Shown here: positions 2,699 through 39,572 of the stretch, piece by piece
Layout of the letters: the number at the start of each line of letters is the position of its first letter
Position numbering within the stretch: position 1 is the stretch's first letter
Virus record (IMG/VR): IMGVR_UViG_3300042482_000702
Coordinates: 186,001 to 250,000 of that record
Strand: one strand, 5' to 3'
DNA: 64,000 bases
Program-made: the position numbers and the translations under genes
Notes under the pieces: model-generated
Seen by the model: only the letters and a program-made list of their open reading frames with translations
What the model was told of the DNA's origin: nothing
The model's database searches: none

Positions 2699-5600
2699 TT
2701 AACCATTACAATCTAGAATATCTGAACGACAATCTAAAACCTGTATTACCTGTCCTTCATAAACACGATAAATAATGTTATAATTAGAATATTCACCGTT
2801 AATTAGTTGGGTGTAATACCCATCTGTAGTGTATGAACCGGCATTATTTTGTGACCGCATATAAACACCCGATGAATAGGAATTATCTCCACCACCAAAA
2901 CAATCGCTAAAATGAAATGAAGATTGCATGGTTGCAAAAAATTTGATTGTCATAGCACTATTGACCAAATATGTCATTTTGTATGTGTTGTTATATTGGT
3001 TTGGATTTGAATCGTAATATATAACAGATATATAAGAATCTCCGGTTCTTACAAAAGTATTGGTTTTAACACCGTTTGTATATAAAAAAATAGTGTAGGA
3101 TATATTTTTATTTGATGGCTCACAACTAAGAGATAATTTTTTCCAACTAATATTATTTCTACAACAATCACAGATTCCTGTCCAAAAACTACCTAAAGAC
3201 ACGTCTGTAAAAGTACCGGCACCGGCAACCCCCGCAGATGAAAAATTAAATTTAAATGGTTGTCGGATATTGTTGCTAACCATCTCATAAGTTATTAGAC
3301 TTTCGAAGTTTGCAGAGCTAAACCAAATAGTTGGAGCGTTTATATTACTACCATTATTAATGAATTGGTTGTTAATATTGTTAAAATAAACAGTTTTTTG
3401 TTCATTACACGATAAACATAAATTATCTTTATTGGTGCTAAAACAGAATGGAATATCAATATAAGAACAATCTTTAACAAATATGGCAAACCAAGTGGTG
3501 TTATCACTTATCATAAAATTAACAGATAATTGTGTGGAAGCTATAACATATCTTTTCGTAATAAGTCCGGTTGTCTGTTTATTTTGATTCCATCCTTTGA
3601 ATATTGACCCTTTACTAGGTATTGCGGTAATTAAATATTTGTCAACACCATTTTTACCTACTTTAGTTATTGTCGTTCCTGTGGTAGGTCCGTCCGATAC
3701 TGCACCTCCAGCACATGTGCTTTCATATAATACTGTAAAAGTTGTTGTCCCCGAATTTGGGAATACTTCGGTACCACCAGCAATTATTTCACAATCAGGG
3801 GTTGTGGGTTTATAGTTTTGTTGTACTTCTTCTGAGGTGAGTGCCTTACAGTGTATTCTAAAATCGTAAACTCTCATACTAGACGCAAACCCGGAAATAT
3901 TTTGAATCCTATAGGGTCCAGGTGTTGAACCATTTAACGGTTTAGTCATCGCTTTTGATTTTAATAACACACCATTCTTATAAAGAGAACCAATTCCATC
4001 ACTAAAAGTAAATGTCATGTGATATATATTGTTAACTAAAAAAGTACCAGGTCCACATCCCGTATCTGAAGGTGTAAGTCTAGTTGCTATATCTGTACCA
4101 CAATATATTGCACCTGTGGCGGTAGTATGTAGAACAAAATCTCCCCAACTCCCAGAACCATTATTTAAACCTACGGTAAATACTGGCGAATAATCACCCA
4201 TAGTTATGGGCATAAAAATAACTTCTACTGTAAATGATGGTGATAAAATAACAGTACCTGAAACACTTTGGTTACTAGTATTACTGAATGTTATGCTTCC
4301 ATTATTTGCTGAATCAAACGTTGGTCCATTTATAAGTGTTCCGTTATTACCGTTTCCAGATAAATCTGCCCAAACTGTTCCCGTACCTGGATATGAACTT
4401 GTATTTCCAGCGTCTAAATTTAATATAAGACAACTTTGTGCTATTGTATCGTTATAGTTTTGTAATATTTCTTGTGATGAAAGAGCTCGGTTGTAGTATC
4501 TATAAATACTAATATTACCGGAGAATCTTCCATAGACACTTGTGTTAACTGTTACTCCACGTGCGGATAGTTCTACTTTTGTCTTAGGAGAAGCTAAACC
4601 ATTTTTTATAAAAACACCGTTTATATATAATGAAGGTTGTTTATTTACTACTGTTATAACTATATGTACAGTACTAGAAATATTTACAGTGTACGATAAT
4701 AAACAAGGCATATATCCATCTCCATGGTCAAAAACCTGTATTACATTAGTCCCAACAGATATTACAAAGTTTCCATTATTTTGACCGTCTGTAGATTTAT
4801 TAGCATTTGTAATATATCTCTGACCGCTAGTTCCTGGGGTTCCTGTTGTGGATTGTCCTACTATAGTTGCCTCACTAGTAGGTTTACATACAAATTCGTA
4901 TGCAAAATTATCATAAACGGGATACCAAGGGGCAACATCAAATGTTGGTGTTGTAATTGCTTGAGACAAGTTAGGGTTAGGTGTGGTAAAAAATTTTGGT
5001 CCTGATAGAGAAACATAATCATCCACCCCATCAAATACAATACTCCCACCATTCTCAGAATTAAAAGTTGGTCCATTTGTTATCAACCCAATACTTGTAT
5101 AACTACTTAAATCTGTCCATATTATTCCTGTTCTTGGATATGAGTTTATATTCCTTGCGTCTAAATTTAATATAAGACTACCTTGTACTGTTGTTGGGTA
5201 TCTTCCTTTTGTGGTGTTATAGTTTTGAAGTACTTCTGTTGCTGTTAGATTTCTATTATACGATAATAGATTGGATAATTTAAAATTACCATAGATATAT
5301 CCATTCGCATAATTGGCTAATCTAAAATTATTACCACTTGGTAGTGGATTAATGTGAGTTCCTGATGTTTGTGTTATATCATTTCCATTAAGATATATTC
5401 TTACAGAACTGCCATTTCTAGAATAAGCAATATTATACCAATTACCGGGAGCTATTACTCCACTATTAGTTGATGTACCTTGATTAACGCCTGATTGGTT
5501 GGTGACAAATATTATATTCCCTGTAGTACTTATTTGGTCATAATAACCATTTGTACGATAGTTACCTTTAAAAATAACTATAGGTCCTTGCCCTCCTTGA

Positions 5601-5866
5601 TTAGTTGCTAGACTATTAAAATTAACCCAATATGAAAATGAAAAGTTTCCTGATGTGTAATCAAGAATATTTCCTAAGTCTACATATTTATTAACACCGT
5701 CAAAAACAATGCTTCCATTATTTGCTGAATCAAACGTTGGTCCATTTATAAGTGTTCCGTTATTACCGTTTCCTGATAAATCTGTCCAAATTGTTCCCGT
5801 GCCTGGATATGAACTTGTATTTCCAGCGTCTAAATTTAATATGAGTCCACTCTGTATTATTGACAT
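2699..5866 (-). CDS. Tail fibre/adhesin-like protein with three tandem LamG (concanavalin A-like) domains
   Basis: Three repeats starting LILNLDA.N..SYP.TG..W.DLS and ending (Y/H)(N/C)(R/K).L(T/S)..E(V/I).QNY; typical phage LamG lectin module. Confidence 0.8.
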   Translation of the reverse strand: MSIIQSGLILNLDAGNTSSYPGTGTIWTDLSGNGNNGTLINGPTFDSANNGSIVFDGVNKYVDLGNILDYTSGNFSFSYWVNFNSLATNQGGQGPIVIFKGNYRTNGYYDQISTTGNIIFVTNQSGVNQGTSTNSGVIAPGNWYNIAYSRNGSSVRIYLNGNDITQTSGTHINPLPSGNNFRLANYANGYIYGNFKLSNLLSYNRNLTATEVLQNYNTTKGRYPTTVQGSLILNLDARNINSYPRTGIIWTDLSSYTSIGLITNGPTFNSENGGSIVFDGVDDYVSLSGPKFFTTPNPNLSQAITTPTFDVAPWYPVYDNFAYEFVCKPTSEATIVGQSTTGTPGTSGQRYITNANKSTDGQNNGNFVISVGTNVIQVFDHGDGYMPCLLSYTVNISSTVHIVITVVNKQPSLYINGVFIKNGLASPKTKVELSARGVTVNTSVYGRFSGNISIYRYYNRALSSQEILQNYNDTIAQSCLILNLDAGNTSSYPGTGTVWADLSGNGNNGTLINGPTFDSANNGSITFSNTSNQSVSGTVILSPSFTVEVIFMPITMGDYSPVFTVGLNNGSGSWGDFVLHTTATGAIYCGTDIATRLTPSDTGCGPGTFLVNNIYHMTFTFSDGIGSLYKNGVLLKSKAMTKPLNGSTPGPYRIQNISGFASSMRVYDFRIHCKALTSEEVQQNYKPTTPDCEIIAGGTEVFPNSGTTTFTVLYESTCAGGAVSDGPTTGTTITKVGKNGVDKYLITAIPSKGSIFKGWNQNKQTTGLITKRYVIASTQLSVNFMISDNTTWFAIFVKDCSYIDIPFCFSTNKDNLCLSCNEQKTVYFNNINNQFINNGSNINAPTIWFSSANFESLITYEMVSNNIRQPFKFNFSSAGVAGAGTFTDVSLGSFWTGICDCCRNNISWKKLSLSCEPSNKNISYTIFLYTNGVKTNTFVRTGDSYISVIYYDSNPNQYNNTYKMTYLVNSAMTIKFFATMQSSFHFSDCFGGGDNSYSSGVYMRSQNNAGSYTTDGYYTQLINGEYSNYNIIYRVYEGQVIQVLDCRSDILDCNG
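4293..4426. repeat. ~134-bp near-identical repeat, copy in LamG domain 3 (partner 5709-5842)
   Basis: atgcttccattatttgctgaatcaaacg...ccagcgtctaaatttaatat occurs twice with about 4 mismatches. Confidence 0.9.
5709..5842. repeat. ~134-bp near-identical repeat, copy in LamG domain 1 (partner 4293-4426)
   Basis: Direct comparison of the two copies. Confidence 0.9.
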
Positions 5867-33327: not shown

Positions 33328-34029
33328 ATGATAAACATACCTTTAACCAAAATATTGTTTCTTGATATTGAGACAGTCGGTGGTTGCACAAACTATACAG
33401 AGTGTAAAGTTAATAATCCTAATGTTGCCAAACAATTTGAAAAGTATTTTGATTGGTTTCAAAAAAGATTTCCGGAAGATATTGGTCAGTCATTAGACTA
33501 TGTTTTTGAAAAACGAGCGGCTTTAGTTCCCGAGTTTTCAAAAATTGTTTGTGTTAGTGTAGCGTTTGTTATGGACAATGGGGATATTAAAAAACAATCA
33601 TTCTCCGGAGACGATGAAAAAAAATTACTAAAAGATTGTCAAACATTACTTAATCGTTGTGGTAAATTAGATTTTTATCTATGTGGACATAACTTAAAGA
33701 ATTTTGACATTCCGATGTTGGCAAAACGAATGATTATTAATGGTTTAAAACCATCATCAATTTTACCATCTTATAATACCAAACCTTGGGAGATTAAAGC
33801 GATTGACACCAAAGAAATTTGGCAATACGGAGCTTACACCGCAATTGGTTCCTTGGACTTAATGTGTTCTTGTATGGATGTTCCATCACCAAAGGAAGGT
33901 GATGTTACTGGAGATAAAGTTCACGACGCGTATTGGAATAAAAATATGTTACCAGAAATAACCGCTTATTGTGAACGAGATGTGTTGGTATTAATTGATG
34001 TAATAAAAAAATTAAAAGAGTTAGAATAA
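33328..34029 (+). CDS. DnaQ-like 3'-5' exonuclease (PolB-exonuclease-related family)
   Basis: LFLDIET (ExoI), GHNLKNFDIP (ExoII), YCERDV (ExoIII). Confidence 0.85.
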   Translation: MINIPLTKILFLDIETVGGCTNYTECKVNNPNVAKQFEKYFDWFQKRFPEDIGQSLDYVFEKRAALVPEFSKIVCVSVAFVMDNGDIKKQSFSGDDEKKLLKDCQTLLNRCGKLDFYLCGHNLKNFDIPMLAKRMIINGLKPSSILPSYNTKPWEIKAIDTKEIWQYGAYTAIGSLDLMCSCMDVPSPKEGDVTGDKVHDAYWNKNMLPEITAYCERDVLVLIDVIKKLKELE

Positions 34030-34625
34030 TGGAATATAATAATTTAGATTTTTTAGAGGAAAAGGCTAAAGAATTAAGACAAAGATTAGAGGGTGATTTC
34101 GAAGATTTAGATATGACCGAAATGATGAATGAATTGGGTGTTGATATTAAAGATTTAGAGGATAAAATGTTAAATCATAGAACTAAACTACCTTTACAAT
34201 TTAATAAATTACATCCCGACGCAACAACACCAAAATATAATTACGAAGGAGATTCAGGGTTTGATTTACATTCTATTGATGAGATAATCATACCCCCATT
34301 TGGAAGAGCATTAGTCCCTACTGGATTATCTTTTGATATTAAAGATGGGTATGAAATTCAAGTTAGAACCAAAAGTGGTTTAGCCATTAATCAGGGTCTT
34401 ATGATATTAAATTCTCCCGGAACAGTTGATTCGTCATACACTGGAGAAATAAAGGGGATTATTTTTAATACTAACCCTTTTGAATTTACAATACCTAAAG
34501 GTATGAAAATAGGTCAAGCTGTCTTATGTCCCGTTGTAAATGGGGGGTGGGTTGACTTGGTAGAAGTTAATAAAATAAACGAAAAAGATAGAGGTGAAAA
34601 TGGATTTGGAAGTACAGGGATATAA
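34029..34625 (+). CDS. dut: Trimeric dUTPase with N-terminal extension
   Basis: GDSGFDL, RTKSGLA, NSPGTVDSSYTGE, IGQAV, RGENGFGSTG (motifs I-V). Confidence 0.95.
   Translation: MEYNNLDFLEEKAKELRQRLEGDFEDLDMTEMMNELGVDIKDLEDKMLNHRTKLPLQFNKLHPDATTPKYNYEGDSGFDLHSIDEIIIPPFGRALVPTGLSFDIKDGYEIQVRTKSGLAINQGLMILNSPGTVDSSYTGEIKGIIFNTNPFEFTIPKGMKIGQAVLCPVVNGGWVDLVEVNKINEKDRGENGFGSTGI
34577..34607 (+). repeat. 31-bp exact direct repeat, copy 1
   Basis: aaacgaaaaagatagaggtgaaaatggattt. Confidence 0.95.
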
Positions 34626-35232
34626 CTCAATAGATTTAAAAGTGGTAATGAGACCTTATGAGTCAGAACATGAATTAAGATTGTTTTGTCAAGAATTAAA
34701 AAAAACATTAGGAGATTCTCCGACAATTGTTGAACTTGGTTCATATATGGGTGAAAGTAGTTTAATTTTTTCTCAAGAATTCCCTAATGGGAAAATTATA
34801 TGTATAGATTCGTGGGAAGGTGGGTTTGACGATTCCGATTCCGCTAGTCACGCCGATTATATTGATGTTGAAGAACAGTTTGATTTAAGATTATCATCTG
34901 TTAATAACATTACAAAATTAAAAGGATATTCGACAGATTTCACAATCGAATGTGATATGGTTTATATCGACGCTTGTCATAAATATGAGTGTGTTATGAA
35001 CGATATTAAACATTGGGGACCATTAACCACGAAAGTAATTTCCGGTCACGATTATAATACAGATGAATTTATTAGGATTCATCCACATATTGCAGGGGTT
35101 AAAGTTGCAATAAATGAATCTTTAGGGATTCCGGATAAAATATTTGGTGATGGGTCATGGTTTAAAATAATATTTAATAAAAACGAAAAAGATAGAGGTG
35201 AAAATGGATTTAGTTCAACAAAATTGTTTTAA
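34594..35232 (+). CDS. Class I SAM-dependent methyltransferase (Methyltransf_24-like); start probably ATG 34600 or 34648
   Basis: VELGSYMGES, CIDSW, DMVYIDACHKY, ISGHDY. Confidence 0.85.
   Translation: MKMDLEVQGYNSIDLKVVMRPYESEHELRLFCQELKKTLGDSPTIVELGSYMGESSLIFSQEFPNGKIICIDSWEGGFDDSDSASHADYIDVEEQFDLRLSSVNNITKLKGYSTDFTIECDMVYIDACHKYECVMNDIKHWGPLTTKVISGHDYNTDEFIRIHPHIAGVKVAINESLGIPDKIFGDGSWFKIIFNKNEKDRGENGFSSTKLF
35181..35211 (+). repeat. 31-bp exact direct repeat, copy 2
   Basis: aaacgaaaaagatagaggtgaaaatggattt. Confidence 0.95.
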
Positions 35233-36157
35233 TAAAAAAATATTAATAATTGGTGGTAGTGGTTATATTGGTAGTTTTTTGAGAAAAAAACTACCTTATG
35301 ATTTAAGTTCTGTCGATATCGAATGGTTTGATAATAATGAGTCAATATCGGTTGATTTTGGTACTTTATCGGAATCGTTTTTATCGGAACAAGATGTTAT
35401 TATTTTGTTGGCGGGACATTCAAGTGTTAAAATGTGTCAAGGGGATTATATGAACGCGTTTAATAATAATGTTGTTAATTTTTTAAAATTAACAAATAAA
35501 ATTAAATTAATTGAAAAACGAATTAAACTAATTTACGCTAGTAGTTCTAGTGTATATGGCATGACAGGGGATTTAATTGTTGATGAAAATTATAATAGTT
35601 TCATACCTTATAATAATTATGACATAACCAAACATATAATCGATGTTTATGCGGAATTTTCAGGAGTGGAATATTATGGGTTAAGATTTGGAACGGTTAA
35701 TGGATATTCCCCGATAATGAGGAGTGACGTGATGATAAACTCAATGACATCCTCAGCGTTAAATACTAAAAAAATTCAGTTATATGTTAAAGACACATTA
35801 AGACCTATTTTGGGAATTAATGATTTAACTTCAGCAATTATTAAAATTATTGAGGAGCCAAAAGATTTGAGAGGTCATTATAATTTAGCTTCGTTTAATA
35901 GTACTTCAGAAAAAATCGCGATGGGGGTTTCAAAAATTACAGGGGCCGATATTATTGAAATGGAATCCCCAAATAAAAACCCAACAAATAAACTTGAAAG
36001 TAAAAACTATAATTTTTCAATTAATTGTGATAAATTTATTGAAAATTTTGACTTTAAATTTGAAGAAACAATTGAAAGTATTACCAAAAGTATTGTTGAT
36101 AACTTTGAAAACATTAAATTAACTATAAGAGATAAAATAATTAACTATGAATTATAA
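35198..36157 (+). CDS. NAD-dependent nucleotide-sugar epimerase/dehydratase (extended SDR); start probably ATG 35204
   Basis: ILIIGGSGYIG, YASSSSVYG, YDITK (YxxxK), LRFGTVNG. Confidence 0.9.
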   Translation: MKMDLVQQNCFNKKILIIGGSGYIGSFLRKKLPYDLSSVDIEWFDNNESISVDFGTLSESFLSEQDVIILLAGHSSVKMCQGDYMNAFNNNVVNFLKLTNKIKLIEKRIKLIYASSSSVYGMTGDLIVDENYNSFIPYNNYDITKHIIDVYAEFSGVEYYGLRFGTVNGYSPIMRSDVMINSMTSSALNTKKIQLYVKDTLRPILGINDLTSAIIKIIEEPKDLRGHYNLASFNSTSEKIAMGVSKITGADIIEMESPNKNPTNKLESKNYNFSINCDKFIENFDFKFEETIESITKSIVDNFENIKLTIRDKIINYEL

Positions 36158-37346
36158 CAAAAAAAAAGAATGTATTTGTTGTGGTAGTAACGATTTAACT
36201 GAAATTTTAAATTTAGGTGAGCAACCATTGGCGAATTCGTACCATAATAATGACAATGAAATATTACCTAATTTCCCGTTAAATCTTAATTTATGTGGTA
36301 AATGTTATCATTTACAATTATCACATATTGTAAACCCGGATTTATTATTTAGAAATTATTTATATGTTAGCGGTACTTCAAATACGTTAAGAAAGTATTT
36401 TAATTGGTTTGTTGATTTTGTAAATGAGTATTGTGAATTAAAAACCGGGTCAGTATTAGATATTGCTTGTAATGATGGGACTCAATTAGATTATTTTAAA
36501 AATAAAGGTTGGGACACATATGGTATTGACCCGTCTAAAAATTTATATGATGTAAGTTCAAAAAATCATAATATTGTTTGTGATTATTTTGATAGTAAAA
36601 ATTTTGATAGAAAATTCGATGTGATTACGGCACAAAATGTTTTTGCTCATAATGAAAACGCTAAAGAATTTTTGGATAATTGTTATACATTAATGCACGA
36701 TGATTCTTTATTGTTTATCCAAACGTCGCAATCCGAAATGGTTAATAACAATGAATTCGATACAATTTACCACGAACATATTTCATTTTTTAATATTAAT
36801 TCATTTAATGAACTGACAAAACGAACTAATCTACATTTAATTGATGTTATTAAAACACCTGTACACGGTATTAGTTATTTATTTGTGTTAAGTAAAAAAG
36901 AAAAAAATAAATTTTTAATTGATAATTTAATTTCAGTTGAAGAAGAAAAAGGATTATTATCTTATGAGACATATATTAATTACAAAAAAAATGTCTCAGA
37001 AATAGTTAATGACTTTAAAAAGTCAATCCAAAAATATCGTGATAGAGGTTATAAAATTATTGGGTATGGTGCGGCAGCCAAAGGCATGACTTTTTTAAAT
37101 TTTGCTAATGAAAAGATGGATTTTATAATTGACGATAATGAATTAAAACAAGGGTTATTCACCCCTGGGACTAACACTGAAATTAAATCGATTAATTTTT
37201 TACATGACTATAACAATGATGATTATATAGTATTCGTTCCATTGGCGTGGAATTTTTTCACCGAAATTAAAGAAAAAATTAAAAAAGTGAGAAATAATGA
37301 GAATGATGTTTATATAAAATATTTTCCAAAATTTACTGATAAATGA
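36147..37346 (+). CDS. NDP-hexose C-methyltransferase (zinc-binding, TcaB9/EryBIII-like family)
   Basis: CICCGS...LGEQPLAN...C.KC.HLQL zinc site, DIACNDG, FDTIYHEH, GYGAAAKG, LAWNF..EI. Confidence 0.88.
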   Translation: MNYNKKKECICCGSNDLTEILNLGEQPLANSYHNNDNEILPNFPLNLNLCGKCYHLQLSHIVNPDLLFRNYLYVSGTSNTLRKYFNWFVDFVNEYCELKTGSVLDIACNDGTQLDYFKNKGWDTYGIDPSKNLYDVSSKNHNIVCDYFDSKNFDRKFDVITAQNVFAHNENAKEFLDNCYTLMHDDSLLFIQTSQSEMVNNNEFDTIYHEHISFFNINSFNELTKRTNLHLIDVIKTPVHGISYLFVLSKKEKNKFLIDNLISVEEEKGLLSYETYINYKKNVSEIVNDFKKSIQKYRDRGYKIIGYGAAAKGMTFLNFANEKMDFIIDDNELKQGLFTPGTNTEIKSINFLHDYNNDDYIVFVPLAWNFFTEIKEKIKKVRNNENDVYIKYFPKFTDK

Positions 37347-38077
37347 AAACAATTATATCACATTTTTACAATGAAGAGTATCTTCTCCCTTGGTGGCTTA
37401 AACATCACAAACAATTTTTTGACCACGGAATTATGATTGATTACCATTCTACGGATAATTCAGTTAATATTATTAAAGAAATTTGTCCGACTTGGGAGAT
37501 TGTTGAAAGTAAAAATAAAGAATTTGACGCCGCTGATGTAGATGTTGAAGTTATGGAGATTGAATCAAAATTAGATGGGTGGAGAATCGTTTTAAACACA
37601 ACGGAATTTTTAATTGGTGATTTTGAAAAGTTATCCCAAATTAATAAACCTGAAGATATTATAATATCTTCTTATGTTATGGTTGATAATGTTAATGAGG
37701 AGTTTACTTATCCTAACATAAATAAATCACTCATATCTCAACGTTTAAATGGGTTTAAAGATGTTGGATTCAGGAGGGGAAGAAAATTAAGTAATTTTTA
37801 TTCTACTTATCCTTTAGGTCGACATTACAACATTATTAATACTGACAATTTTATAATTTTATGGTACGGATTTTCACCAATGAACGATTCAATAATTAAA
37901 AGAAAATTACAGATTCAAAATAAAATGCCAGAAAGTGATAAACAAAATGGCCGGGGGTACCAACATATCACAAATGAGAATAAAATTAAGAATGAGTTTA
38001 AAGATTTACAAAATAAGTCGTATGACTTAACTATTAATATTAAAAAATATGATAACAATAATATACTCAACACATAA
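37343..38077 (+). CDS. GT2-like glycosyltransferase
   Basis: HFYNEEYLLPWWL.HH...FDH..MID..STD.S. Confidence 0.75.
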   Translation: MKTIISHFYNEEYLLPWWLKHHKQFFDHGIMIDYHSTDNSVNIIKEICPTWEIVESKNKEFDAADVDVEVMEIESKLDGWRIVLNTTEFLIGDFEKLSQINKPEDIIISSYVMVDNVNEEFTYPNINKSLISQRLNGFKDVGFRRGRKLSNFYSTYPLGRHYNIINTDNFIILWYGFSPMNDSIIKRKLQIQNKMPESDKQNGRGYQHITNENKIKNEFKDLQNKSYDLTINIKKYDNNNILNT

Positions 38078-39572
38078 AAATGAAAATTATAATAACAAAT
38101 TTAGACAACATTTGTTACAAAGTTCAGGTTTAAAAGATATTCAAATATTAGAATATATTAACCACAATCAATTTAGTTTATCTGAATTATATAATAAAGG
38201 GATTTCAGAATCAATTTATGATATAATAGTTTGTTGTCACAACGATATTAAACTTGAAAATGGGTGGGGTAAAAAATTACTTAATGATTTTGATGAAAAC
38301 CCTGATTATGGTATTATAGGTAAAGCTGGTTCTTGTTATTTCCCTGAATCAGGGATTTACTGGGAAAAAATGAATCAAACAATGGTTGGACAGGTTTATC
38401 ACCACCCTGAAGGTCAGAAAAAATGGTTAAGTAATTATTCATCAAAATTACCATATTTAATACCTGTTGTAACTATTGATGGGTTATTCATATCATTTAA
38501 TAAGTTAAAGATTAACCATCAATTTGATGAGACAATTGGTAAATTTCATTTTTATGACCATTTATTTTGCGTACCAAATTATTTAGATGGTGTTAAAATT
38601 GGTGTTACCTCATCTTTTGAAATCACTCACGAATCCGTTGGTAAACCTAATATGGAATTTTATAATTCAAAAGATATGTTCATTAAAAAATGGGGTAATA
38701 AATTACCTTTGGATTTAAAACCTTTGGAGGTTCATATACCGATTATAAAAGAAAAACAATTAAAAAATATTGGTAGAGTTGCGGTAATTATACCAACAAA
38801 AGGTAAGACAGACTTATTATTTTCCTGTGTAAACTCTTTTATAAAAAATTGTAATCCCCAATTATTTGATGTGTTTATCGCCGACACTGGGTCGTCAGAT
38901 TTTGAAAAAAAAGAAATTAGAGAATTTATATTAGAAAATCAAACCAATATTAAGATAAACTTAATTGAGTACGATTATTATAATTTTGGAAAAATTAATA
39001 ATGATGTGGTTAAAAATCGTATAACCGATGAATATGAATTTTTATTATTTTGTAATAACGATATTAAAATCCTTAACAATGTTATTTACGGGATGTTAAA
39101 AAATTTTAAAGAAAATTCAAAAATTGGGACTGTTGGGTGTAGATTACATTACGAAAATAACACAATACAACATAATGGTATTGTTGCCAATTTTGATTCT
39201 GTTGGTAATTTTGGAGTAGGACATATAGAATTAAATAAATACTATTCTAAAACATATAAAGTTAATGATGTTATCGGTTCAACGGGTGGACTACTGATGA
39301 TTAAAAAAATTATGTTTGAAAAATTAGGTTATTTTAACGAAAATTATATTTCTTGTTTTGAGGATGTTGAATTAAATTTAAAATCTATTTTATTAGGTTA
39401 TCGGAATATTTGCGACACTAGTTTAGTGGCGTATCATTTTGAAAGTCAAACTCGAAATGATGACCCTGAAAATTTAAAAAAATTACAACTTGATTTTAAG
39501 AATAATTTATTTCCATTTGTTTCTAATAATATAGAGAGACTACACAAACATATTTTAATGATTAAAACATAG
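38049..39572 (+). CDS. Two-domain GT2 glycosyltransferase
   Basis: YNKGI...CCHNDI...IDGLF...FHFYD (domain 1); VIIPT...ADTGS...FCNNDI...VG.RL.Y....QH.G...EDVEL (domain 2). Confidence 0.85.
   Translation: MITIIYSTHKNENYNNKFRQHLLQSSGLKDIQILEYINHNQFSLSELYNKGISESIYDIIVCCHNDIKLENGWGKKLLNDFDENPDYGIIGKAGSCYFPESGIYWEKMNQTMVGQVYHHPEGQKKWLSNYSSKLPYLIPVVTIDGLFISFNKLKINHQFDETIGKFHFYDHLFCVPNYLDGVKIGVTSSFEITHESVGKPNMEFYNSKDMFIKKWGNKLPLDLKPLEVHIPIIKEKQLKNIGRVAVIIPTKGKTDLLFSCVNSFIKNCNPQLFDVFIADTGSSDFEKKEIREFILENQTNIKINLIEYDYYNFGKINNDVVKNRITDEYEFLLFCNNDIKILNNVIYGMLKNFKENSKIGTVGCRLHYENNTIQHNGIVANFDSVGNFGVGHIELNKYYSKTYKVNDVIGSTGGLLMIKKIMFEKLGYFNENYISCFEDVELNLKSILLGYRNICDTSLVAYHFESQTRNDDPENLKKLQLDFKNNLFPFVSNNIERLHKHILMIKT

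What the first reader, a model, noticed from the sequence alone, without database searches (positions are those of the whole stretch)
34577..35211. Methyltransferase cassette flanked by a 31-bp dual-coding direct repeat taken from the dUTPase C-terminus
The exact repeat aaacgaaaaagatagaggtgaaaatggattt encodes dUTPase motif V (NEKDRGENGF) in one frame and the start (GAGGTG-AAA-ATG, MDL...) of the next gene in another. The methyltransferase therefore ends in a copy of the dUTPase tail (NEKDRGENGFSST), and the epimerase's only usable ATG lies in copy 2. Recombination between the copies would excise the methyltransferase and leave dut joined to the epimerase, though dut would then end ...GFSSTKLF rather than ...GFGSTGI. 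This looks like a gene-capture scar, or a switch that toggles glycan methylation.
Basis: partly seen in the sequence, partly recalled or inferred. Interest (0 to 1): 0.68.

Follow-up and report, generated by a model that had tools for sequence, protein, structure and literature searches.

The report
Recombination scar lends epimerase its start
The repeat is real: its second copy is a leftover piece of a dUTPase gene end, carried along when a sugar-modifying gene block was spliced in behind the methyltransferase of a 322-kb phage, and it now supplies that block's start codon; it is an instructive recombination scar, not a switch.

Summary
An exact 31-nt direct repeat lies at 34577-34607 and 35181-35211 (37 nt at 95%), with none expected by chance. 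It occurs in independent assemblies from at least six other samples.

The window belongs to a 322,477-bp tailed phage from a large freshwater family. In that family, dut and a 507-aa glycosyltransferase (GT507) flank a hypervariable slot of -4 to 5,204 nt.

Copy 2 is not a duplication made by capture of the methyltransferase (MT):
- MT sits behind dut in close relatives that have no copy 2.
- Homology to those relatives ends at 35173 and resumes at 38047.
- Copy 2 is therefore the 5' edge of a swapped-in block (epimerase, C-methyltransferase, GT2_4).
- In other relatives that block sits directly behind dut, and the epimerase either has its own ATG or starts at the ATG inside dut motif V.

An unequal crossover moved about 60 nt of dut tail along with the block.

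A sister haplotype, 98.5% identical and seen in five assemblies, still has the MT stop and a more foreign-looking copy 2 with only 23 exact nt. The window lost one unit of an ATAAT tandem. That fused MT to the remnant, and three sites changed to the copy-1 state.

No excision product was found, and it would spoil dut motif V. The "Shine-Dalgarno" reading fails because this genome shows no SD signal.

The parts
34029..34625 (+). dut, a trimeric dUTPase of 198 aa. Its last ~60 nt are the source type of the repeat. It forms the conserved left border of the variable slot.
   Evidence: PF00692, E 1e-22. Motif V aligns to solved dUTPases such as 8hrv. Conserved synteny hyp405-exo-dut in about 90 loci.
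34577..34607 (+). Repeat copy 1 (extended 34571-34607). It encodes dut motif V in frame 0. The ATG at 34600 in the +1 frame is the MT start.
   Evidence: The same ATG opens the downstream gene in L003, L005, L006, L007, L039 and others.
34600..35232 (+). Methyltransf_24 methyltransferase, 210 aa here and 191 aa in relatives. The last 19-20 codons are read-through into the dut-tail remnant.
   Evidence: PF13578. The cluster holds many 191-aa members ending WFKLK or WFKII. 93-97% identical orthologues sit behind dut in L003, L006 and L007.
35166..35173 (+). Site of a 5-nt deletion: one unit of an ATAAT-ATAAT tandem present in the sister haplotype. The deletion removed the MT stop and put MT into the dut frame of the remnant.
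   Evidence: Alignment of the window with L124-L128.
35174..35232 (+). Ectopic remnant of a dut 3' end (FNK-NEKDRGENGF-SSTKLF-stop). It is the left edge of the swapped-in block and now serves as the epimerase leader.
   Evidence: Homology to MT-bearing relatives stops at 35172-35173. nhmmer with a dut-tail profile finds ectopic tails only here and in L099. The Ser/Thr codons downstream of the core are of the L004/L099 type, not the resident type.
35181..35211 (+). Repeat copy 2 (extended 35175-35211). It contains the only usable epimerase start, the ATG at 35204.
35204..36157 (+). NAD-dependent sugar epimerase/dehydratase, 317 aa, with a borrowed 10-residue leader (MDLVQQNCFN) in place of its own start.
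   Evidence: PF01370/PF16363. Homologues start MKKIL.. or MDNKKIL...
36147..37346 (+). Sugar C-methyltransferase-type protein (Methyltransf_13/23/14). It always travels with the epimerase.
   Evidence: The epimerase-CMT pair is linked in L091-L105.
37343..38077 (+). GT2_4-type glycosyltransferase, the last gene of the swapped-in block.
   Evidence: PF13704. Homology to close relatives resumes at 38042-38049.
38049..39572 (+). GT507 glycosyltransferase, the conserved right border of the variable slot.
   Evidence: PF13712/PF00535. Present in 72 loci at -4 to 5,204 nt from dut.

Best explanation
The repeat is the scar of an unequal, largely non-homologous crossover between two related phages that carried different genes in the same variable slot. 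One parent had dut-MT-... . The other had dut-epimerase-CMT-GT2_4-GT507, with the epimerase translated from, or in frame with, the ATG that Asn-Gly of dut motif V happens to create.

The crossover joined the 3' end of MT to a point about 60 nt before the end of the other parent's dut. The recombinant therefore kept its own dut and MT, followed by a redundant dut tail that heads the epimerase block.

The remnant persists because the epimerase has no start of its own, and the remnant's ATG at 35204 is its start codon.

Later changes in the window's lineage:
- Slippage deleted one ATAAT unit. This removed the MT stop, so MT now reads 19-20 codons through the remnant in the dut frame.
- Three remnant positions took the state of the resident dut tail, most simply by short-patch conversion. 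This raised exact identity from 23 to 31 nt.

Shown directly: the break-points, the parental-type arrangements, the haplotype series and the loss of the native start. Inferred: the crossover mechanism, the direction of the conversion, and use of the ATG in vivo.
For: - Break-points. Close relatives (92-94% nt) match the window up to 34625 (no MT: L004, L005) or up to 35173 (MT but no copy 2: L003, L006, L007; also L056 and L088), and all resume at 38042-38049. In them MT ends WFKLK-stop and the next gene follows directly.
- Parental-type arrangement. In L096 and L097 (epimerase 88% aa) dut is followed after TAG-T by the epimerase's own ATG. P0003 (84%) begins MDLGQQEF.., which is the +1 reading of a dut tail, and overlaps the upstream gene by 26 nt, exactly as dut and MT overlap in the window.
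- Foreign origin of copy 2. Downstream of the core it uses the TCA-ACA Ser-Thr codons seen in the L004 and L099 tails, not the resident AGT-ACA.
- Sister haplotype L124-L128 (98.5% over 4.46 kb). It keeps the MT stop, has five extra nt (ATAAT), and its remnant reads GFGSTKLF with only 23 exact nt. Three of the four substitutions that separate the two copy-2 versions put the window in the copy-1 state.
- Same kind of scar elsewhere. L099 has a decayed dut tail, with an in-frame TGA, right upstream of its epimerase and 3.5 kb from its real dut. L124 has a 30-aa ORF made of the first 10 codons of GT507 and the last 18 codons of MT. L129/P0001 has the same epimerase fused to the first 24 codons of another slot gene.
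- Slot variability. The gap ranges from -4 to 5,204 nt in 72 loci.
- Reality of the junctions. Exact proteins are on 8-10 contigs from several sources.
Against: - No parent with an identical dut tail directly upstream of a >95% identical epimerase was recovered. DNA of the P0003 and P0001 contigs could not be fetched.
- The direction of the three copy-2 changes is inferred from outgroup-like tails, not proven. It could be window converted towards copy 1, or sister diverged or patched.
- The MT 3' end also differs sharply between the two haplotypes (10 differences in 43 nt). The junction region has therefore seen more than one exchange, and the history may be more complex than one crossover plus one conversion.
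- The remnants in the window and in L099 start at nearly the same place in dut. This hints at either one old event or a preferred break-point, and I cannot tell which.
- Use of ATG 35204 is not shown experimentally.
Confidence: 0.8

Rival explanations
1. Programmed toggle: recombination between the two copies excises and restores MT, switching glycan methylation on and off.
For: 31-37 nt of direct identity 604 nt apart is enough for occasional recombination in a phage. Relatives without MT exist (L004, L005).
Against: - Relatives without MT do not carry the predicted joint. They have other genes behind an intact dut tail.
- All 11 independent contigs with the remnant-epimerase junction have MT upstream.
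- The predicted joint has no match in IMG/VR.
- The product would end dut in GFSSTKLF, whereas every dut tail in about 90 loci keeps GFGSTG. Loss of motif V nearly inactivates dUTPases, and one Ser-to-Ala change costs about ten-fold (PMC5519681).
- The sister haplotype has only 23 exact nt.
- Re-insertion has no mechanism.
Confidence: 0.04
2. Target-site duplication made when a mobile MT cassette inserted between dut and the epimerase.
For: Direct repeats flank a single gene. In L096/L097 and in the P0003 contig, dut and the epimerase are adjacent.
Against: - There is no transposase, integrase or homing endonuclease between the repeats; the interval holds only MT.
- MT lies at this position without a duplication in many relatives, down to 66% aa identity.
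- The flanks of copy 2 are of a different dut allele type from copy 1.
- 31-60 nt is far longer than known target-site duplications (own knowledge).
Confidence: 0.04
3. A selected, portable expression signal: the dut tail is kept with cassettes because it provides translation initiation, or coupling, to whichever gene lands behind it. It would then be more than a passive scar (see the section on the most novel reading).
For: - The motif V ATG is in frame with, or is the only start of, downstream genes of at least four families in nine lineages, and of the epimerase in P0003 and in the window.
- The copy-2 core has 0 changes from copy 1, while the ~36 nt flanking it differ from the dut tail at many sites and by two indels.
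Against: - The L099 remnant carries no ATG and has a stop codon, and its epimerase has its own start.
- In L129/P0001 the same epimerase uses a different borrowed leader.
- The in-frame relation follows trivially from the common stop-T-ATG junction.
- There is no SD usage in this genome.
Confidence: 0.1
4. Assembly artefact: a chimeric join or collapsed strain variants.
For: This is a metagenome assembly. Two contigs from other samples break at 34561, next to copy 1.
Against: Identical junctions appear in independent assemblies from JGI, ENA and Logan made with different assemblers. L120 and L121 span both copies.
Confidence: 0.01

Closest known systems
Modular shuffling in hyperplastic regions of T4-type phages through PeSL cassettes (Arbiol et al. 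2010, PMC2839356)
   Same: Non-essential genes sit in a variable region between conserved core genes. Close relatives differ by insertion, deletion and replacement. Short direct repeats flank single genes and could in principle give small circles. By its capsid protein the phage is a distant relative of the T4-like group.
   Different: PeSLs are intergenic, multi-copy promoter-plus-terminator cassettes. Here the repeat is a coding fragment of a core gene with two copies only, no promoter-like or terminator-like site, and no fold better than shuffles. Circles were not tested.
Mosaic 'novel joints' made by illegitimate recombination in tailed phages (the Hendrix-type model for lambdoid phages and mycobacteriophages; from my own knowledge, not checked in a paper here)
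   Same: Joins fall at or near gene borders. Recombinants that keep all needed functions survive. Gene fragments are left at the joints.
   Different: Here the leftover fragment has acquired a job as the start codon of the displaced gene. A graded series of haplotypes documents the later steps: stop loss by slippage and patch homogenisation.
Integron gene cassettes expressed from a fixed upstream signal (own knowledge)
   Same: Cassettes without their own expression signal are read from a signal at a fixed docking position next to a conserved gene.
   Different: There is no integrase and no attC-like structured site. The joints differ from event to event. The signal is a start codon inside another gene's coding sequence, not a promoter.
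Shine-Dalgarno-independent, A-rich ('Kozak-like') initiation in Bacteroidia (Baez et al. 2019, PMC6847099)
   Same: This genome's start regions are G-poor and A-rich, with peaks at -3 and -12, and have no SD enrichment.
   Different: The host is unknown. The G-rich stretch before the motif V ATG is atypical for this genome, so the start probably works through overlap or re-initiation, or simply as the first available AUG.

Membership tests
Recombination scar (partial duplicate of a border gene) in a phage variable region | The repeated segment is a fragment of an adjacent conserved gene | tested here: met
   Copy 2 and its flanks (35174-35232) match a profile of dut 3' ends (nhmmer E 2e-6) and read NEKDRGENGF in the dut frame.
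Recombination scar (partial duplicate of a border gene) in a phage variable region | Homology with close relatives breaks at the edge of the duplicate | tested here: met
   The break is at 35172-35173 in five MT-bearing relatives and homology resumes at 38042-38049.
Recombination scar (partial duplicate of a border gene) in a phage variable region | Relatives exist in which the displaced gene lies directly next to the intact border gene | tested here: met
   L096 and L097 have dut followed directly by the epimerase. The P0003 contig shows a 26-nt overlap and a leader that is the +1 reading of a dut tail.
Recombination scar (partial duplicate of a border gene) in a phage variable region | Other joints of the same kind occur in the same region | tested here: met
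   L099 has an ectopic dut tail. L124 has a chimeric ORF of GT507 head plus MT tail. L129 has a gene-X head fused to the epimerase.
PeSL regulatory cassette (T4-type phages) | Strong sigma-70-like promoter within the repeat | tested here: not met
   No promoter-like site overlaps either copy. 36 sites were found in the region against 34.2 expected.
PeSL regulatory cassette (T4-type phages) | Stem-loop terminator within the repeat | tested here: not met
   No terminator-like site at the copies. Fold z-scores are +0.70 and -0.98.
PeSL regulatory cassette (T4-type phages) | Many intergenic copies across the variable regions | tested here: not met
   Two copies in the 322-kb genome, both in coding sequence.
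Transposon-type target-site duplication | A mobility gene or defined element ends between the repeats | tested here: not met
   Only the MT gene (PF13578) lies between the copies.
Transposon-type target-site duplication | Both copies derive from the one resident target sequence | tested here: not met
   The flanks of copy 2 are of another dut allele type. The sister haplotype shares only 23 exact nt with copy 1.
Programmed excision / phase-variation switch | Both states are found in natural populations | tested here: not met
   There is no deletion joint in 11 contigs or in IMG/VR. Reads could not be examined, so the test is weak.
Programmed excision / phase-variation switch | Both states leave the flanking genes intact | tested here: not met
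   Excision would change the dut end from GFGSTGI to GFSSTKLF. GFGSTG is invariant in all relatives.
Trimeric dUTPase (for the gene that donates the repeat) | dUTPase fold signature and a C-terminal motif V (RG..GFGSTG) | tested here: met
   PF00692, E 1e-22. Aligns end to end with 8hrv including motif V.

The most novel reading that the evidence does not exclude
The dut 3' end acts as a general docking and expression pad for the glycosylation slot of this phage family. The Asn-Gly codons of motif V create an ATG that lies in frame with the usual start position of the next gene. A gene that lands there, or loses its own ATG, is then still translated, and selection keeps about 60 nt of dut tail attached to cassettes when they are displaced. 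On this reading a constrained catalytic motif doubles as a portable start module that eases cassette turnover.
Probability: 0.12. Interest if true: 0.55.

Novelty: new member of a known kind. Interest (0 to 1): 0.36.

Why it matters
This is an unusually legible natural record of how a phage variable region is rebuilt:
- Both parental-type arrangements are present in relatives.
- The recombinant joint is preserved.
- A leftover gene fragment has been pressed into service as another gene's start codon.
- The later tidying steps are visible: stop loss by 5-nt slippage and local homogenisation of the repeat.
- Sister haplotypes show alternative borrowed leaders for the same startless epimerase.

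It shows that gene-fragment scars can become functional parts of neighbouring genes. It also shows that the strongly conserved end of dUTPase marks one border of a fast-evolving sugar-modification island in a widespread family of ~320-kb freshwater phages.

It does not reveal a new kind of element or a regulatory switch.

Tried and rejected
- Donor search by DNA. The remnant-epimerase junction has no match in IMG/VR, and neither does the predicted deletion joint.
- Donor search by protein in IMG/VR. The best epimerase there is only 59% identical.
- Metagenome scan. It gave L097, L098 and L099 but not the contigs of P0001 or P0003.
- The Shine-Dalgarno reading of GAGGTG is rejected.
- The PeSL-like element reading is rejected.
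- An early idea that L005 keeps "the first nine MT codons" is withdrawn. Those codons are simply the +1 reading of the dut tail, so L005 shows a GT92-type gene started from the motif V ATG, not an MT remnant.
- Simple microhomology at the MT/dut-tail joint could not be assessed. The sequence there is A/T-rich and low in complexity.

Full report
WHAT IS THERE

The window is bases 186001-250000 of a 322,477-bp IMG/VR virus record that CheckV rates complete. It is 31.5% G+C. It carries a T4-superfamily-like major capsid protein, a portal and tail-fibre genes. The nearest isolates by capsid protein are a Microcystis phage and Flavobacterium phages, at 41-42% aa identity.

All genes around the finding lie on the + strand:
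- a PolB-exonuclease-like gene, 33328-34029
- dut, 34029-34625 (PF00692)
- a Methyltransf_24 methyltransferase (MT), 34600-35232
- an NAD-dependent sugar epimerase/dehydratase, 35204-36157
- a C-methyltransferase-type protein (CMT), 36147-37346
- a GT2_4 glycosyltransferase, 37343-38077
- a 507-aa glycosyltransferase (GT507), 38049-39572

The 31-nt string occurs exactly at 34577-34607 and 35181-35211. It occurs nowhere else even with three mismatches, and no shuffle produced a match. The match extends to 37 nt at 95%.

In the dut frame both copies read NEKDRGENGF, which is motif V. In the +1 frame each copy holds an ATG, at 34600 and at 35204. MT starts at the first ATG and ends 21 nt after copy 2, reading it in the dut frame. 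The epimerase starts at the second ATG.

Epimerase homologues begin MKKILIIGG or MDNKKILIIGG. The window has Asn where their start Met stands, and the next in-frame Met lies behind the NAD-binding glycine motif. The copy-2 ATG is therefore the only usable start.

The structure is not an assembly artefact:
- The exact 210-aa MT is on 8 contigs and the exact 317-aa epimerase is on 10 contigs, drawn from JGI, ENA and Logan.
- Contigs from other samples (L118-L123) are 99.9-100% identical to the window. Two of them span dut, MT and the epimerase with both copies.

THE SETTING: A HYPERVARIABLE SLOT

About 90 related loci from IMG/VR and metagenomes share the order hyp405-exo-dut-[slot]-GT507-.... 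The distance from the end of dut to the start of GT507 runs from -4 to 5,204 nt in 72 loci, and in 27 of them the two genes abut. In the window the distance is 3,423 nt.

Even genomes 92-94% identical in the flanks differ in slot content:
- L003: MT plus gene X
- L004: gene X alone
- L005: a GT92-type gene alone
- L006: MT plus two genes
- L007: MT plus GT92
- the window: MT plus epimerase-CMT-GT2_4
- L124-L128: the window set plus GT92
- L129/P0001: MT plus an X'-epimerase fusion

WHERE COPY 2 COMES FROM

Relatives that have MT match the window only up to 35172-35173, and all relatives resume at 38042-38049. In them MT ends WFKLK-stop and is followed at once by the next gene, with no second dut tail. 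A regular-expression scan and an nhmmer scan with a dut-tail profile found no second tail in any other locus except L099.

MT behind dut is therefore the older state. The newcomer is the segment 35174-38046, whose first ~60 nt are a dut 3' end.

The arrangement from which such a segment could be cut exists in relatives:
- In L096 and L097 (epimerase 88% aa identity) dut ends ...ERGENGFGSTGI, then TAG, one T, and the epimerase's own ATG.
- In the contig of P0003 (84%) the epimerase begins MDLGQQEF... This is what a dut tail gives in the +1 frame. It also overlaps the upstream gene by 26 nt, the same overlap as dut and MT in the window. I could not fetch that DNA, so the identity of the upstream gene is inferred.

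Downstream of the exact core, copy 2 uses the TCA-ACA codons for Ser-Thr seen in the tails of L004 and L099. The resident tail uses AGT-ACA. Copy 2 is therefore not a local duplication of the resident tail.

The simplest event is an unequal crossover between a dut-MT-... phage and a dut-epimerase-... phage. On the left it joined the MT 3' end to a point about 60 nt before the end of the other dut. On the right it was homologous, at or beyond the GT507 start.

LATER STEPS, READ FROM A SISTER HAPLOTYPE

Five assemblies (L124-L128) are 98.5% identical to the window over 33629-38084. They differ from it at the joint in two ways.

1. MT stop. In the sister haplotype MT is 191 aa and ends WFKII-stop, and the remnant follows the stop. 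The window lacks one unit of an ATAAT-ATAAT tandem. That deletion removes the stop and shifts MT into the dut frame of the remnant. The dUTPase-like end of MT is therefore a by-product of a 5-nt slippage. It is tolerated in a haplotype found in many samples.

2. Remnant sequence. The sister remnant reads NEKDRGENGFGSTKLF and shares only 23 exact nt with copy 1. Four substitutions separate the two versions of copy 2, and at three of them the window carries the copy-1 state. The sister version continues the foreign-type codons seen in real tails elsewhere. I therefore infer that the window's core was homogenised by a short conversion patch templated by copy 1.

That direction is an inference. 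The region 35106-35212 holds 19 of the 69 differences between the haplotypes, including 10 in the last 43 nt of MT proper. The joint has evidently been reworked more than once.

THE SAME KIND OF SCAR RECURS

- L099 (epimerase 71%) has a decayed dut tail, with an in-frame TGA, directly upstream of its epimerase. It lies 3.5 kb from the intact dut, with four other genes between. There the epimerase keeps its own ATG.
- L124 has a 30-aa ORF made of the first 10 codons of GT507 fused to the last 18 codons of an MT allele, followed by the GT92 gene that follows MT in L007. This is the footprint of a further unequal crossover between a window-type and an L007-type genome.
- In L129/P0001 the same epimerase (98%) is fused to the first 24 codons of gene X. 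It shares sequence with the window only from the last few bases of the remnant onward.

Three leaders thus serve one startless epimerase.

WHY THE MOTIF V ATG IS SO OFTEN A START

Among 49 distinct real dut-tail contexts, 15 encode Asn-Gly as AAT-GGN and so contain an ATG. In 9 of these that ATG opens a long ORF. The ORFs belong to several families: MT (L003, L006, L007, L022), gene X (L004, L019, L050), a GT92-type gene (L005) and an unknown gene (L039).

The common stop-T-ATG junction puts the normal downstream start in the same +1 frame as the motif V ATG, and the eight codons between them are open. A gene that loses its proximal ATG is therefore still translated from the upstream one. L005 is an example, with ATA at the proximal position.

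Translation does not rest on a Shine-Dalgarno site:
- SD-like 4-mers precede 3% of 212 long ORFs, against 7% at random positions.
- Start regions are G-poor and A-rich, with peaks at -3 and -12.

This is the pattern described for Bacteroidia (PMC6847099). GAGGTG is simply Arg-Gly-Glu.

NOT A SWITCH

Recombination between the copies is possible in principle. Its product would end dut in GFSSTKLF. Every dut tail in the relatives keeps GFGSTG. Motif V is required for efficient catalysis: truncating it leaves a nearly inactive enzyme, and one Ser-to-Ala change costs about ten-fold (PMC5519681).

None of the 11 independent contigs that hold the remnant-epimerase joint lacks MT. The predicted joint is also absent from IMG/VR. 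Relatives without MT have other genes behind an intact tail.

The repeat has none of the features of the PeSL cassettes that drive shuffling and mini-circle formation in T4-type phages (PMC2839356). It has no promoter-like or terminator-like site, no fold better than shuffles, and only two copies in the genome.

Read-level evidence could not be obtained.

VERDICT

The "gene-capture scar" reading is right in kind, but the roles are reversed: the epimerase block brought the dut tail, and MT was already there. The toggle and ribosome-binding-site readings are not supported.

This is a new, well-documented example of a known process, illegitimate recombination in a phage variable region. Its one attractive twist is that the scar became the start of a neighbouring gene.

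Noticed in passing
L087:2594-4487 (IMGVR_UViG_3300032304_001472): The dut gene of this relative is interrupted at motif III. One ORF holds the dut N-part followed by an intein-like N-half starting with Cys. Next comes a free-standing 297-aa ORF. A third ORF holds an intein-like C-half ending HN, followed by the rest of dut including motif V. It looks like a fractured gene with a split intein and an inserted endonuclease-type gene.
   Followed up: partly
whole genome G000; window start regions: There is no Shine-Dalgarno signal upstream of genes. Leaders are G-poor and A-rich with peaks at -3 and -12, as in Bacteroidia. This suggests a Bacteroidota-type host, and the nearest isolates by capsid protein include Flavobacterium phages.
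   Followed up: partly
L124:4426-4518: A 30-aa ORF is built from the first 10 codons of GT507 and the last 18 codons of an MT allele. It sits between GT2_4 and a GT92 gene and is a second crossover scar in the same slot.
   Followed up: yes
L129:172-1182, and the P0001 contig: The same epimerase (98% aa) is fused to the first 24 codons of the slot gene that follows MT in L003. This is a third leader for a startless gene.
   Followed up: partly
window 34561: Contigs from two different samples and pipelines (L118 from ENA, L119 from JGI) both begin exactly at 34561. That is one base after a polymorphic site and 10 nt before the repeat, which suggests several dut haplotypes joined to the same downstream sequence in those populations.
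   Followed up: no
window 35106-35148: The last 43 nt of MT proper carry 10 differences from the sister haplotype, which is otherwise 98.5% identical. Several are unique among all MT alleles seen, which suggests a small foreign patch.
   Followed up: partly
window 4293-4357 and 5709-5773; genome 161806-162551 (outside the window): There are other dispersed exact repeats. A 65-nt and a 41-nt pair lie 1,416 nt apart inside the 1,055-aa structural gene. Repeats of 44-53 nt are spaced 386-389 nt apart in an upstream region of the genome.
   Followed up: no
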